Assembly (NCBI GenBank): GCA_033442325.1 | Contig: JAWQFM010000008.1 | Location: 186,001-250,000 of the forward strand | Direction of reading: 5' to 3' | DNA from: Salpingoeca rosetta | Lineage: Eukaryota; Protista; Choanoflagellata | Length of the DNA stretch: 64,000 nt | Notes under the pieces: model-generated | Database searches by the model: none | The model's input: only the letters and a program-made list of their open reading frames with translations | Told to the model about the DNA's origin: nothing | Translations under genes and position numbers: made by a program | Part shown: positions 21,953 through 25,079 of the stretch, in pieces | Layout: each line of letters starts with the position of its first letter | How positions within the stretch are numbered: position 1 is the first letter of the stretch

Positions 21953-24900
21953 ATGACGGCGTACAATCCTCATCCTCCTCAAGCTGAATCAGGCCCATAT
22001 GACCTGTTCATCTCTGTGCGGTTCAACGAAGCGCTGGGCGCAGCCAAAGCGCTCAAAGCGGCGCTAACCAAACAGGGCTTCAGTGTGTTCTTGTGTGCTG
22101 TTGCTCCCGGTGGAGACATTGCGACAGCAATCATTGATGCCTTGCACTCGTGCAAAATGGTCATCATCTTGGGGTCGCCAACGTACGGGGAGAAGACTGA
22201 GAACAAGTTCATCAGCACCTTTGAAGAGCTACGCTACATCATTCACCAGGACAAGCCGTTCTTCTTGGTCAAGATGTGCGCCAAATTCTTGGCACCCGCT
22301 GCCCAATTTTACCTCACCAACACCATCGCTTATCATGCCTGGAGGGTCAATGGAAATGATGACGAACACGACGTCCCAGAATCACTCGTGACGGCCATCC
22401 TTGACAAATATGCGGTACGGTTTTGGAGTTCACGTATGTCTGTGTGTGAGGGTTCGTGATATCGTTCACCACAGTTTTGCTTCCCAGGCTTGAACACATT
22501 TCATCGTGATGACACGTTCGTTCAGAGCAGCTTGGACTGGTGCCTATCTCTCCTCCGCCCCCCGCCCCCCCCCCCTTTTTTTTTTCTTGTGCCTCCTTCC
22601 TTACTCGCCACGCTCTTGTTTTGTTTGATCTTCATAAGAATCTCCCACACGGCGAAAACGAAAAAGGACTGCCATACAGGGATGGGTTCCTTGGGCTTGG
22701 GGCCAATGGCATTTTTCGCAACCCCATGACATCTGACGAGGCAGACAAAGCTTTGCTTGATCGTCAAGACGCTGCTGTTGGCGACTTCTTGCTGTGGCGT
22801 CGCAAGCCGCACGGTCAACTCACCATCAGCGTGGTTCGTGGGTGCACATGCTATGCAATATGTGTACAATATGTCTGCACCCAGCTGCCTCACCTTTCCT
22901 TGTCTTTCATGTCAAGCCCATAACCTGCTTTGATCGCTCGCTCCATGTCCATCGTGACTCCTCACTCGTCAGGGCTGTTGCCTTTCTGCTGCTCTGCTGT
23001 CACTGCTTGCACCGTGTGAAAATTGGCATACGGTTCCCACAGGTGACTGGAGCCAAAGAGACAACTCATCACGCGGTCACAAACGATGACGCTGGACAGT
23101 TCCTGCTCGATGGCACCCCTTTGTCCGCGCCATGCCAAACCTTGGCAGATGTGGTGGCACACCTCACCTCCGCTCAGGAGATCATTCCATGCTCGGTAAG
23201 TTCTTTGTACCGAACTCGCCGATCTCCTCGCACGTGTTTCGTTCAACCCCACCCATTGTGCTGCGGCCTAACGCAACCCTCTCTGTGAATTTCTTTGCGT
23301 GGGCAGCTACAGCACCAGGTCAGACCCCCAAAGGAAGATGAGGTGATCTACGACTATGCGTCGGCCATGGGTCTTCAGGGCACGAATGGTGGCTCAAGTG
23401 GTGGGTGGCCACAACTCCCAGTTTCCCCAGAAGACTTGGTGGAAGTGGTCGGCGATGTGCGTGTCAAGCACCCATGGAGCTGGCGCAGGCTCGTGGCGCT
23501 TATCGTCGTTGTGCTTCTTGTTTTGACGGCTGTGGTTGCCGTGCCCGTCGCCGTCATCGGCGTCGGAACTGCAAGCAGCGGCAGAGGAAACAAAACAACA
23601 ACAATCGCCATGGCCATCACCACCACACCCACCACAACAACGGCGACCACCACCAGCAGCCCAGCCACGACGCCAACTTCCACTACAACATCAACGACCG
23701 TCCCATGTACATCACCGTCGTCGGTGGATCTCGACTGTGCGAGTTCGAATTCTCGAGCAGCTGTCAGCCTGGTGAATGCATGCGGCGTAAGCGAGGTATT
23801 CAATTGCTGCTGTGAGGAGTTCTACGCACTGTCCTTGGTGACGGGTTCGATCACAGTGACCGATTTCGCCGCAGCGTTGAATTTCGGTGGTGTGACGAGC
23901 ATCTCTGGCAGCGTTTTCGCCTCCTCACTTCAGCTGACCTCCGTCGACTTTGGACATCTGAGGTTCGTCGGAGGCACCGTCGACATCGGTGGCAACAACC
24001 TGACGACTTTGAACTTGAACCAACTCAGCCAGATTGGAGGCGATTTTAACATGCAGTCAAACCACCTGACGGCACTACACCTGGGCGCGCTGCAGAGTGT
24101 CGGCGGTGATTTGACCGTGACAGACAACGTTCTCACCGCTGTCAATTTCATGAATGTTGTCACAGTGGGGGGAACAGTGGATCTCAACGACAACTTCCTT
24201 GTTGAGGTCGACCTGGGCGCCTTACAGCAAGTTGGTGGCGATTTCCTCGCCTCTGGCATGTTCCTCACTTCCGTGAATCTGCTGGGGCTCGAACGGGTGG
24301 GAGGAACCCTATCCTTCAGCTCCAATGACATCACAACCCTCGATATGGGTGCCCTGACAAGTGTTGAGAGATTGTCTGTTGGCCTCAATCCTCTGACTAC
24401 ACTTGATCTGAAGAACATATCGAGCCTGTATGAGCTTGCTGGTACTGGCAATCAAGTTACCTCTGTTGACTTTGGGAAAGTGACATCGATCGAAGGTTCG
24501 CTGCACCTGCGGTACAGCAACAAGCTGAAGAGCCTCGACTTCACACCCCTTCAACAAACGGGCGAAATCCAAGTCGACCACAGCCCCCTCAGCGAGGTTG
24601 TGGACTTCGGTACCTTGACCAGGGTGAACGGCGGGTTGTTCATTCACGCTTCCCAGCTTTTTCACGTGAACATGACTCGTATTGAGCACATCGATGGTTT
24701 CCTGAATTTGGCAAACAGCCTCGCCAGCATCGACTTCCAGCAGCTTACCTTCATCGGAGGCGATATTCAGGCGTATTTCCCAAAGCTTGCAACGTTGAAC
24801 TTTCAGAATGTCCGTGAAATCAGTGGAGTGGTGCGTTTCAGTGTCGGCGACATCGAATCCGTACATTTTGGTGATGTGACGCGAATCGGAGAGGGCCTCT

Positions 24901-25079
24901 TCTTGTCCGATAACAACATCAGGTCTATCGCCTGGGACAACCTGACTGTGATCGACGGGCCGCTTCATGTCCAGGGCAATTCCCTGACGAATTTGGACTG
25001 CCAAGGCCTTGGCACCTGCTTGTGCGTTGACGCGAGTGTCAACATCACAAATTGCCCTGAGCTGTGTGGTGATTGCTGA
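21953..25079 (+). CDS. Putative type II transmembrane receptor: TIR - SH2-like - TM - Thr stalk - about 18 LRR/L-domain-like repeats (about 860 aa)
   Basis: Exons 21953-22414, 22639-22833, 23043-23195 and 23307-25079, all phase 0. TIR motifs YDLFIS and STFEEL. SH2-like segments MTSDEADKALL, GDFLLW, LTISV, TLADVVAHL. TM about 23490-23567 after WRR. Repeats of about 22 aa, LxxVGGxLxLxxNxLTxLDFG, with Cys caps. The TIR-to-SH2 junction uses an AAG acceptor and is the least certain part. Confidence 0.75.

What the first reader, a model, noticed from the sequence alone, without database searches (positions are those of the whole stretch)
21953..25079. Inverted Toll-like receptor: cytoplasmic TIR + SH2-like domain, type II TM, extracellular LRR/L-domain solenoid
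Seen in the sequence: four phase-0 exons join into about 860 aa with no signal peptide. The order is TIR, SH2-like domain, a single hydrophobic helix preceded by basic residues (KHPWSWRR), a Thr-rich stalk, and about 18 repeats of about 22 aa. The repeats carry Cys caps and several NxS/T sequons. Established: canonical TLRs are type I (LRR-TM-TIR), and the positive-inside rule implies N-in/C-out here. Inference: this is an independently assembled pattern-recognition-like receptor with TLR parts in reverse order and an SH2 module added, possibly sensing bacterial prey or cues. I do not recognise this architecture as described. The SH2 similarity begins upstream of the internal Met at 22726, which favours the fusion over two separate genes.
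Basis: partly seen in the sequence, partly recalled or inferred. Interest (0 to 1): 0.92.

Follow-up and report, generated by a model that had tools for sequence, protein, structure and literature searches.

The report
Reverse-order TIR–SH2 membrane receptor gene
This is a real, transcribed gene of the choanoflagellate Salpingoeca rosetta that puts a TIR and an SH2 signalling domain inside the cell and a leucine-rich-type repeat rod outside, the reverse order of a Toll-like receptor, and it belongs to a family of about ten such genes whose function is untested.

Summary
The four phase-0 exons (21953-22414, 22639-22833, 23043-23195, 23307-25079) translate to exactly the annotated 860-aa S. rosetta protein PTSG_03080. 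Spliced cDNA contigs cross all three junctions, including TIR-to-SH2.

The domains are confirmed:
- **TIR:** Pfam match above cutoff; fold Z about 15 to Hydra TRR-2 and SARM1.
- **SH2:** weak when scored alone, but a four-member family profile hits ZAP-70 at 3e-14 and the fold matches.
- **Membrane and outside parts:** one TM helix, a Thr-rich stalk, and a Cys-capped solenoid of about 18 repeats. The solenoid is of the Receptor-L/BspA-LRR type, not a TLR horseshoe.

N-in/C-out topology is inferred, not shown. A secreted paralog that carries the same solenoid behind a signal peptide supports it.

New points:
- The gene is not unique. The TM-cap-solenoid cassette follows TIR, SH2 or TIR+SH2 heads at nine S. 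rosetta loci. An earlier follow-up in this scan reached the same family from another piece of the genome.
- This copy's SH2 has Trp where the phosphotyrosine-clamping Arg (betaB5) sits. Five paralogs keep the Arg.

Best reading: a clustering-activated type II receptor that signals through its TIR domain. Function is untested. I found no paper describing this architecture.

The parts
21904..21952 (+). 5' UTR (minimum extent)
   Evidence: cDNA contig X4 record 1 starts at 21904. ATG 21953 is the first start codon after an in-frame stop.
21953..22414 (+). Exon 1, residues 1-154: TIR domain (about 15-154)
   Evidence: Pfam TIR_2 31 bits (cutoff 28) and TIR 21.7 bits (cutoff 21.3). AF2 pLDDT is about 90. 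VIA Z 15.0 to Hydra TRR-2 TIR and 14.7 to SARM1 TIR.
22226..22228 (+). Codon of E92 (FEEL motif), candidate catalytic glutamate of the TIR
   Evidence: E92 is at least 90% conserved in 38 subfamily sequences. Its equivalence to the plant WCLxEL or SARM1 catalytic Glu is inferred from the motif only.
22415..22638 (+). Intron 1 (224 nt, GT..AG, contains a C/T homopolymer tract)
   Evidence: Skipped in X4 contig record 2, depth 6.
22639..22833 (+). Exon 2, residues 155-219: linker and N-terminal half of SH2 (alphaA, betaB, betaC)
   Evidence: The intron falls at the same SH2 position in the paralogs.
22795..22797 (+). TGG codon of W207, at the SH2 betaB5 position that is normally the FLVR arginine
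   Evidence: HMMER alignment to the ZAP-70 C-SH2 places FLLW against FLLR. The four-SH2 alignment A2 agrees. Five paralogs have Arg here. The cDNA contig covers the site with no differing letters.
22834..23042 (+). Intron 2 (209 nt)
   Evidence: Skipped in contigs of X4 and X5.
23043..23195 (+). Exon 3, residues 220-270: C-terminal half of SH2 (betaD to alphaB)
23196..23306 (+). Intron 3 (111 nt)
   Evidence: Skipped in contigs of X4 and X5.
23337..23357 (+). Cytoplasmic acidic tyrosine motif DEVIYDY (Y285, Y287)
   Evidence: The motif recurs in paralogs: PEVVYDVGR in PTSG_02597, and NDVYDLGR and ALYDNVE in the C35 gene. Phosphorylation is not shown.
23466..23567 (+). Basic cluster KHPWSWRR (324-331) and the single TM helix (332-357)
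   Evidence: Hydropathy maximum 3.2. The TM with its ...AVPV motif and a preceding basic cluster is conserved in nine family members.
23589..23702 (+). Thr/Ser/Pro-rich stalk (365-402)
   Evidence: Direct reading. Similar stalks occur in the paralogs on C35 and C10.
23706..23813 (+). N-terminal Cys cap (C404, C414, C429, C437-439; LDC...NCCCEEFY)
   Evidence: The cap motif is shared across the family.
23817..24980 (+). Solenoid of about 18 repeats of about 22 aa (441-828)
   Evidence: Repeat HMM. AF2 pLDDT 85.5, pTM 0.82. ESM Atlas TM 0.84-0.87 to Recep_L_domain proteins. VIA Z 18-22 to LRR proteins.
24999..25079 (+). C-terminal Cys cap (C835-C860) and stop codon
   Evidence: The cap is conserved in PTSG_02597 and PTSG_04244.
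25080..25171 (+). 3' UTR (minimum extent), followed by a (GT)n microsatellite
   Evidence: cDNA contigs of X4 and X5 end at 25171, where the repeat begins.

Best explanation
PTSG_03080 is a single-pass type II membrane receptor.

**Architecture.**
- The N-terminal 331 residues face the cytoplasm. They carry a TIR domain of the TIR_2 type (structurally nearest Hydra TRR-2 and SARM1) with a conserved Glu, an SH2 domain, and an acidic tyrosine motif.
- Residues 332-357 cross the membrane.
- A Thr-rich stalk and a disulfide-capped Receptor-L/LRR_5-type solenoid of about 18 repeats face outside, or the lumen of a vesicle or food vacuole.

**Family.** The gene is one member of an S. rosetta family built by placing a conserved TM-cap-solenoid exon behind exchangeable cytoplasmic heads: TIR, SH2, or both.

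**Likely mechanism (inferred).** A ligand bound along the solenoid clusters receptors. This brings the TIR domains together, and they signal by self-association and probably by NAD+ cleavage. The tyrosine motif and the SH2 domains link the family to the large tyrosine-kinase network of this organism. In this copy the SH2 has lost the phosphotyrosine-clamping arginines, so it probably acts as a phosphotyrosine-independent spacer or interaction surface. Its phosphorylated tail, if any, may instead be read by SH2-competent paralogs.

**What is shown and what is inferred.** Shown: gene structure, splicing, domain identities, the single TM, and the family. Inferred: topology, ligand binding, clustering, enzymatic activity and tyrosine phosphorylation.
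For: **Gene model and transcripts.**
- The model equals the annotated protein.
- Spliced contigs cross all three junctions.

**TIR.**
- Pfam match above cutoff.
- pLDDT about 90, and Z 14-15 to TRR-2, SARM1, SPARTA, RUN1 and AbTir TIRs.
- E92 is nearly invariant in the subfamily.
- A different S. rosetta TIR makes cADPR in E. coli (preprint 10.64898/2026.04.20.719644).

**SH2.**
- The profile of four relatives hits ZAP-70/SYK SH2 at 3e-14, and 100 PDB SH2 sequences at E below 1e-3.
- Relatives pass Pfam SH2 at 37 and 25 bits.
- The fold matches SHP2 N-SH2 (target TM 0.66, rmsd 2.5 A).

**Topology.**
- No N-terminal hydrophobic segment and a single TM.
- All sequons, the Cys caps and the mucin-like stalk lie C-terminal of the TM.
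- The same capped solenoid follows a signal peptide in PTSG_04244.
- A basic cluster sits directly N-terminal of the TM in all nine members.

**Family.** TIR, SH2 and solenoid hits are colinear at loci on C8, C4, C9, C30, C35, C10, C32, C13 and C26, each with a homologous TM.

**Loss of pTyr clamp.** W207 replaces the Arg found in five paralogs. Loss of betaB5 Arg costs about 1000-fold in affinity, and human SH2D5 has Trp at this position (PMC7530234).
Against: - No experiment or orthogonal predictor fixes the topology. The positive-inside bias over 20-residue flanks is modest (32 versus 21 K/R).
- No ligand, expression condition or phenotype is known.
- Expression is very low in the two raw RNA-seq runs examined: 2 reads and 0 reads.
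- The TIR-to-SH2 junction rests on one contig of one run.
- Equivalence of E92 to the catalytic Glu was judged from a motif, not from a residue-level structural alignment.
- Paralog gene structures are read from six-frame ORFs without transcript support.
- No protein with the full architecture was found outside S. rosetta. The searches were limited, so conservation is unknown.
Confidence: 0.6

Rival explanations
1. It is a surface adhesion or cell-coat protein, like the fungal Ecm33 and bacterial BspA-type L-domain/LRR_5 surface proteins. The cytoplasmic TIR and SH2 merely anchor it to cortical complexes, and it does not transduce a ligand signal.
For: - The nearest structural neighbours of the ectodomain are bacterial surface Recep_L proteins and fungal Ecm33 cell-wall proteins.
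- The solenoid family is very large in S. rosetta and includes secreted forms.
- The SH2 of this copy lacks the pTyr clamp.
Against: - TIR domains are signalling or enzymatic modules in every well-studied system.
- The TIR is well conserved, including E92.
- Conserved acidic Tyr motifs lie next to SH2 domains in the paralogs.
Confidence: 0.2
2. It is a regulatory or decoy member of the family. It hetero-oligomerises with SH2-competent paralogs such as PTSG_02597 and modulates them. It offers a ligand-binding rod and a tyrosine motif but cannot itself read phosphotyrosine.
For: - It is the only member with Trp at betaB5, and it also lacks the alphaA2 Arg.
- It retains the DEVIYDY motif shared with paralogs.
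- It has the same TM and cap modules, which could mediate co-assembly.
Against: - No evidence of co-expression or interaction.
- The TIR looks intact, so the protein could signal on its own.
- Some SH2 domains bind ligands without the FLVR Arg, for example TYK2 (PMC7530234).
Confidence: 0.15
3. The fusion is an annotation artefact: a TIR gene and a separate SH2/TM/solenoid gene starting at the internal Met (22726).
For: An in-frame Met exists at 22726, and the TIR-to-SH2 junction is seen in only one contig.
Against: - That contig (359 nt, depth 6) joins exon 1 to exon 2 to exon 3 at GT..AG sites.
- The SH2 fold begins upstream of the Met.
- The paralog PTSG_02597 and the C9 and C14 loci have the same TIR-then-SH2 order and the same SH2 intron position.
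Confidence: 0.03

Closest known systems
Toll-like receptors (animal and choanoflagellate; Richter et al. 2018, PMC6040629)
   Same: A single-pass receptor pairing an extracellular LRR-superfamily solenoid with Cys caps to a cytoplasmic TIR domain. The likely logic is ligand-induced clustering of TIRs.
   Different: - The order and topology are reversed: TIR is N-terminal, there is no signal peptide, and the protein is type II.
- The ectodomain is a Receptor-L/LRR_5-type solenoid, not a TLR horseshoe (rmsd 9-12 A to TLR/Toll).
- An SH2 domain is inserted.
- The TIR is not closer to TLR TIRs than to the Hydra TRR-2, SARM1, plant and bacterial TIRs at the top of the structural ranking.
Choanoflagellate TIR proteins with SH2, Ank or Arm domains, and 'Kinase TLRs' (Richter et al. 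2018)
   Same: Lineage-specific fusions that join TIR directly to phosphotyrosine-pathway modules. The TIR+SH2 pairing is explicitly mentioned.
   Different: Those TIR+SH2 proteins are described as intracellular and lacking a TM. Here the pair is tethered to a TM and a large ectodomain. Kinase TLRs are type I (LRR-TM-kinase-TIR).
SARM1 and plant/bacterial enzymatic TIR domains
   Same: The TIR fold matches at Z 14-15, and a conserved Glu sits in the helix where these enzymes carry their catalytic Glu. These enzymes are activated by oligomerisation.
   Different: There are no ARM/SAM, NB-ARC or Thoeris partners. Enzymatic activity was not tested here.
Syk/ZAP-70 C-terminal SH2 and human SH2D5
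   Same: The best sequence matches of the SH2 family profile are ZAP-70 and SYK SH2. Like SH2D5, this SH2 has Trp in place of the FLVR arginine (PMC7530234).
   Different: It is a single SH2, not a tandem, and there is no kinase or PTB domain. Paralogs keep the arginine.
Receptor L domain / BspA-type LRR_5 surface proteins (EGFR/insulin-receptor L domains, fungal Ecm33, Bacteroides BACOVA_04585 4fs7)
   Same: The same solenoid type: TM 0.84-0.87 to Recep_L clusters, and Z 18.4 with rmsd 4.3 A to 4fs7. Paralogs pass the Pfam Recep_L_domain and LRR_5 cutoffs.
   Different: Those proteins are secreted, GPI-anchored, lipoproteins or type I receptors. None listed carries an N-terminal cytoplasmic TIR or SH2.

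Membership tests
TIR domain (Pfam TIR_2 PF13676 / TIR PF01582) | Profile match at or above the curated cutoff | tested here: met
   Exon 1 alone scores TIR_2 31 bits (cutoff 28) and TIR 21.7 bits (cutoff 21.3). In the full-length protein the score drops to 26.6.
TIR domain (Pfam TIR_2 PF13676 / TIR PF01582) | Flavodoxin-like alpha/beta TIR fold | tested here: met
   AF2 pLDDT about 90 over residues 17-155. VIA Z 15.0 to Hydra TRR-2 and 14.7 to SARM1, with 122-135 residues aligned at about 3 A.
Enzymatic (NADase) TIRs | Catalytic glutamate in the alphaC region | tested here: inconclusive
   E92 (FEEL) is at least 90% conserved in the subfamily. By motif it lines up with plant WCLxEL. No residue-level structural alignment or assay was available.
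SH2 domain (PF00017) | Profile match at or above the curated cutoff | tested here: inconclusive
   Alone it scores 19.1 bits against a cutoff of 21. Its relatives P0055 and P0022 pass at 37 and 25 bits. The four-sequence profile hits ZAP-70 SH2 at 3.4e-14.
SH2 domain (PF00017) | SH2 fold (alphaA, central sheet, alphaB) | tested here: met
   pLDDT 81-91 over residues 178-265, with helix-strand-strand-strand-helix order. Foldseek matches SHP2 N-SH2 (target TM 0.66, rmsd 2.5 A) as well as Syk and ZAP-70.
SH2 domain (PF00017) | FLVR arginine (betaB5) and alphaA2 arginine that clamp phosphotyrosine | tested here: not met
   W207 aligns with ZAP-70 betaB5 Arg, and S186/D187 with alphaA2 Arg. Paralogs have Arg at betaB5. 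It is a member by homology and fold, but canonical pTyr binding is unlikely.
Toll-like receptor | Signal peptide, N-terminal extracellular LRRs, TM, C-terminal cytoplasmic TIR, in that order (definition used in PMC6040629) | tested here: not met
   The order is TIR-SH2-TM-solenoid with no signal peptide. It is not a TLR; the resemblance is functional logic only.
Receptor L domain / LRR_5 solenoid (Pfam LRR clan, clan membership from memory) | Profile match and right-handed solenoid of 22-24-residue units | tested here: met
   This copy scores Recep_L_domain 21.7 against a cutoff of 21.8, and LRR_4 24.4 and LRR_5 18.6, all below their cutoffs. Paralogs score 56, 45 and 23.7 bits (Recep_L) and 54 bits (LRR_5). 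The model matches Recep_L clusters at TM 0.84-0.87 and 4fs7 at Z 18.4.
Type II (N-in/C-out) single-pass membrane protein | No cleavable signal peptide and one internal TM acting as signal anchor | tested here: met
   Hydropathy shows only residues 332-357 as a TM.
Type II (N-in/C-out) single-pass membrane protein | Experimentally or predictor-determined N-in orientation | not testable with these tools
   Inferred from domain biology, the Cys caps, sequons and stalk on the C side, the secreted paralog PTSG_04244, and the basic cluster N-terminal of the TM.

The most novel reading that the evidence does not exclude
Choanoflagellates independently invented a Toll-like sensing system in reverse orientation. 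It is a family of type II receptors whose Receptor-L/LRR solenoids bind external (for example bacterial) ligands. Their cytoplasmic heads merge TIR NAD+-derived signalling with phosphotyrosine signalling (SH2 plus Tyr motifs). PTSG_03080 is an SH2-dead variant within a hetero-oligomeric receptor set. Such receptors could be the unknown sensors for bacterial prey or morphogenetic cues in S. rosetta.
Probability: 0.3. Interest if true: 0.85.

Novelty: new variant of a known kind. Interest (0 to 1): 0.64.

Why it matters
[quoted passage not shown] Its receptors for these cues are largely unknown. According to Richter et al. 2018, TLRs had not been detected in its genome.

A family that wires an extracellular repeat rod to TIR and SH2 modules gives concrete, knock-out-ready candidates. 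It also shows that TIR-based surface sensing can be assembled in the opposite topology and coupled directly to phosphotyrosine signalling. If the TIR is enzymatic, this would be a cell-surface receptor that converts ligand binding into NAD+-derived signals in a unicellular holozoan.

Tried and rejected
**Searches that found little or nothing**
- Homology search with the SH2-linker region (150-335) found only the protein itself.
- The profile of the two paralogs (A1) found only the protein itself, one MORN-TIR protein and one weak L-domain protein. It did not even recover PTSG_02597, so these word-indexed searches say nothing about absence in other species.
- Paper searches found no description of this architecture. 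The queries were PTSG_03080; choanoflagellate+TIR+SH2; S. rosetta+TIR; type II TM+TIR; and choanoflagellate+Receptor L domain. The supplements of PMC6040629 gave nothing either.
- Manning et al. 2008 (PMC2453073) is not held.
- The S. rosetta TIR tested in the 2026 preprint is a different protein (F2UB80/F2UPN6, 1352 aa).

**Tests that were inconclusive**
- The profile search of the TIR subfamily against PDB sequences aligned only the N-terminal half, so it could not place the catalytic Glu.
- Positive-inside counting over the family gave only a modest bias.

**Dead ends in the wider family**
- Heads of six further TM-cap-solenoid genes (L011, L017, L018, L021, L022, L027) gave no Pfam hit.
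- None of the top 150 TIR relatives maps to the C9, C30, C35 or C10 loci. The annotated models there may not join TIR to solenoid.

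Full report
**What is there**

The window comes from Salpingoeca rosetta (G000 contig C8, 186001-250000). Four exons are bounded by GT..AG introns in phase 0: 21953-22414, 22639-22833, 23043-23195 and 23307-25079. Their translation is 860 aa. It is identical, residue for residue, to P0001, which NCBI names 'hypothetical protein PTSG_03080' and UniRef names 'SH2 domain-containing protein'.

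**Transcript evidence**

I laid four runs on 21700-25300.
- Run X4 is stored as assembled contigs of about 31 Mb. One 359-nt contig (depth 6) reads 22296-22413 | 22638-22832 | 23042-23063. It joins the TIR exon to both SH2 exons. A second contig joins 23194 | 23306.
- Run X5, from the same study, confirms the second and third junctions.
- All skipped segments are GT..AG, so these contigs are cDNA.
- The contigs start at 21904 and end at 25171, where a (GT)n repeat begins.
- Two raw RNA-seq runs from another study gave 2 reads and 0 reads, so expression there is very low.

It rests on one contig in one run.

**Domains**

*TIR.* Exon 1 alone scores 31 bits on TIR_2 (cutoff 28) and 21.7 bits on TIR (cutoff 21.3). 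A HMMER search of 1.84 billion representatives with residues 1-300 gave 329 proteins at E below 1e-10. Most match residues 15-157 at 40-57% identity. In an AF2 model built on 38 of these, the TIR has pLDDT about 90. It aligns to Hydra TRR-2 TIR (Z 15.0), SARM1 TIR (Z 14.7; residues 15-154 against 561-700), and SPARTA, RUN1 and AbTir TIRs. E92, in an FEEL motif, is at least 90% conserved in the subfamily. By motif it corresponds to the catalytic Glu of plant TIRs, but I could not check this by residue-level superposition.

*SH2.* On its own the SH2 is sub-threshold: 19.1 bits against a cutoff of 21, and ZAP-70 at E 0.014. Three relatives settle the matter:
- the S. rosetta paralog PTSG_02597 (P0014);
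- a Salpingoeca infusionum protein (P0055; Pfam SH2 37 bits);
- a metagenomic TIR-SH2 protein (P0022; Pfam SH2 25 bits).

A profile of the four SH2s hits ZAP-70 and SYK SH2 at 3e-14, and 100 PDB SH2 sequences at E below 1e-3. In the model the region 178-265 has pLDDT 81-91 and SH2 topology. It superposes on SHP2 N-SH2 (target TM 0.66, rmsd 2.5 A), Syk and ZAP-70.

*Membrane and ectodomain.* The only TM-grade hydrophobic segment is 332-357, preceded by KHPWSWRR. A Thr-rich stretch follows, then Cys clusters at 404-439 and 835-860. All six sequons lie after the TM.

The ectodomain model is confident (residues 395-860; pLDDT 85.5, pTM 0.82) and is a solenoid. A repeat HMM finds 16 units plus two in gaps, about 18 units of about 22 aa. 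Its best structural neighbours are:
- bacterial Receptor-L-domain proteins (TM 0.84-0.87 over about 465 residues) and fungal Ecm33;
- among solved structures, YopM (Z 21.7), InlJ (Z 19.9), and the LRR_5 protein BACOVA_04585, which has the lowest rmsd among the long alignments (Z 18.4, 4.3 A over 336 residues).

TLR and Toll ectodomains reach Z 14-15 only at rmsd 9-12 A. 'LRR/L-domain solenoid' is right; 'TLR-like ectodomain' is not.

**Topology**

Topology is inferred, not shown. The arguments are as follows.
- TIR and SH2 are cytoplasmic modules, and there is no signal peptide.
- The C-terminal part has disulfide caps, sequons and a mucin-like stalk.
- The same capped solenoid follows a plain signal peptide in the secreted paralog PTSG_04244.
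- Every family member has a basic cluster directly N-terminal of the TM.

**It is a family, not a one-off**

Six-frame searches of the genome with the solenoid, the SH2 profile and the TIR gave colinear, same-strand hits at several loci. I fetched them and found in each a strong TM with a shared ...AVAVPV-type motif. The TM lies in the same large 3' exon as the cap and solenoid.

| Locus | Cytoplasmic head |
|---|---|
| C8 (this gene) | TIR-SH2 |
| C4 (PTSG_02597) | TIR-SH2 |
| C9 (1813-aa exon) | TIR-SH2 |
| C30 | TIR only |
| C35 | TIR only |
| C10 (one 2367-aa ORF) | TIR, then about 430 unassigned residues |
| C13 | weak TIR plus SH2 |
| C32 | SH2 only |
| C26 | SH2 only |

- C14 carries the closest TIR paralog (55% identity), with SH2 but no TM or solenoid.
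- The SH2 intron sits at the same profile position in all copies, so the module has one origin.
- Paralog solenoids pass the Pfam Recep_L_domain cutoff (56, 45 and 23.7 bits) and the LRR_5 cutoff (54 bits).
- Among 20 further solenoid loci, six have the same TM-cap cassette, with heads that match no Pfam family. Several of the others begin with a signal-peptide-like hydrophobic segment, and the rest show none in the exon examined.
- After I had made these counts, the scan's own notes showed that another agent had reached the same family from another piece of this genome ('about ten genes built this way').
- The paralog structures are my reading of ORFs and have no transcript support.

**What is special about this copy**

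In the HMMER alignment to ZAP-70 and in the four-SH2 alignment, W207 (TGG at 22795-22797) occupies the betaB5 'FLVR' arginine position. S186/D187 occupies the alphaA2 arginine position. The paralogs on C4, C14, C9, C13 and C32 all have Arg at betaB5. The cDNA contig covers the codon without differences.

According to PMC7530234, mutation of this arginine lowers affinity about 1000-fold. It is conserved in all but three human SH2 domains, and one of those, SH2D5, has Trp. This SH2 therefore probably does not clamp phosphotyrosine in the canonical way.

An acidic tyrosine motif lies after the SH2: DEVIYDY, with Y285 at 23349-23351. It recurs in paralogs as PEVVYDVGR, NDVYDLGR and ALYDNVE. It is a plausible kinase target, but phosphorylation is not shown.

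**How it most likely works**

The likely sequence is this. A ligand binds along the rod and clusters receptors. The TIR domains, brought together, self-associate and perhaps cleave NAD+. The Tyr motifs and SH2 domains connect the family to tyrosine-kinase signalling. This copy would contribute a TIR and a docking motif but not a phosphotyrosine reader.

A 2026 preprint reports that a different S. rosetta TIR makes cADPR in E. coli. TIR enzymology therefore exists in this organism, but that says nothing direct about this protein. The rivals are a surface adhesion role, a decoy or regulatory subunit, and an annotation artefact. The last is largely excluded by the spliced contig.

**Comparison with what is known**

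It fails the defining order of a TLR, so it is not one. It works 'like' one only in presumed logic. Richter et al. 2018 report TLRs in 14 of 21 choanoflagellates, Kinase TLRs and Kinase TIRs. They note that SH2 is found with TIR in several species, but in proteins without a TM. I found no paper describing the TM-anchored, reverse-order form. The searches are limited to the held library, and Manning et al. 2008 is not held. Outside S. rosetta I saw only other arrangements: S. infusionum SH2-TIR with C-terminal hydrophobic segments, and a soluble metagenomic TIR-SH2.

**Verdict**

I class it as a new variant of a known kind: known modules in an undescribed receptor architecture that forms a family. 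Interest is moderate to high, because S. rosetta is genetically tractable and its receptors for bacterial cues are largely unknown. There is no functional evidence yet.

Noticed in passing
G000:C14:1320412-1321529 (locus L001): This is the closest TIR paralog (55% identity). An SH2 follows it with the same intron position, but no TM or solenoid. The linker resembles that of PTSG_02597 and then runs into an (RE)n repeat. It may be a soluble TIR-SH2 protein or a truncated family member.
   Followed up: partly
P0002 (PTSG_04244, S. rosetta): A secreted relative: an N-terminal signal peptide, about 340 residues with no Pfam match, then the same Cys-capped solenoid and C-terminal cap. It has no TM.
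   Followed up: partly
P0055 (Salpingoeca infusionum EP00049_P000814): SH2 then TIR, the opposite order to this gene, followed by two or three C-terminal hydrophobic segments and no ectodomain. This is a different way of tethering the same SH2/TIR pair to a membrane.
   Followed up: partly
Loci L011, L017, L018, L021, L022, L027 (C24, C13, C34, C29, C1, C5): Six more genes carry the TM(...VPV/IPV)-cap-solenoid cassette. The parts of their N-terminal heads that I scanned match no Pfam family, so the type II solenoid family is wider than the TIR/SH2 subset.
   Followed up: partly
G000:C10:906500-915500 (L005): A single 2367-aa open frame holds a divergent TIR (30% identity), about 430 unassigned residues, a TM, a Thr-rich stalk, the cap and a very long solenoid.
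   Followed up: no
window 22548-22592 and 25172-25218: Intron 1 contains a long C then T homopolymer tract, and a (GT)n microsatellite lies just after the 3' UTR. The reads tool skipped both as repeats, and the cDNA contigs end at the second. (GT)n/(CA)n tracts are also common in the introns of the paralogs, where they translate as false 'CVCV' hydrophobic segments.
   Followed up: no
window 23063 (run X4 contig end): The contig that bridges the TIR-SH2 junction ends in an Illumina adapter sequence (GATCGGAAGAGC...). This is untrimmed adapter in the assembly. It does not affect the junctions.
   Followed up: no
one search hit list (P0015-P0169): The TIR subfamily of this gene is large (329 representatives at E below 1e-10). 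It is fused to many partners: ARM (PTSG_08034), a SecA-like helicase (PTSG_06287), DUF5074 (PTSG_02868), ankyrin, MORN, and an unassigned central region followed by WD40 repeats in metagenomic proteins.
   Followed up: partly
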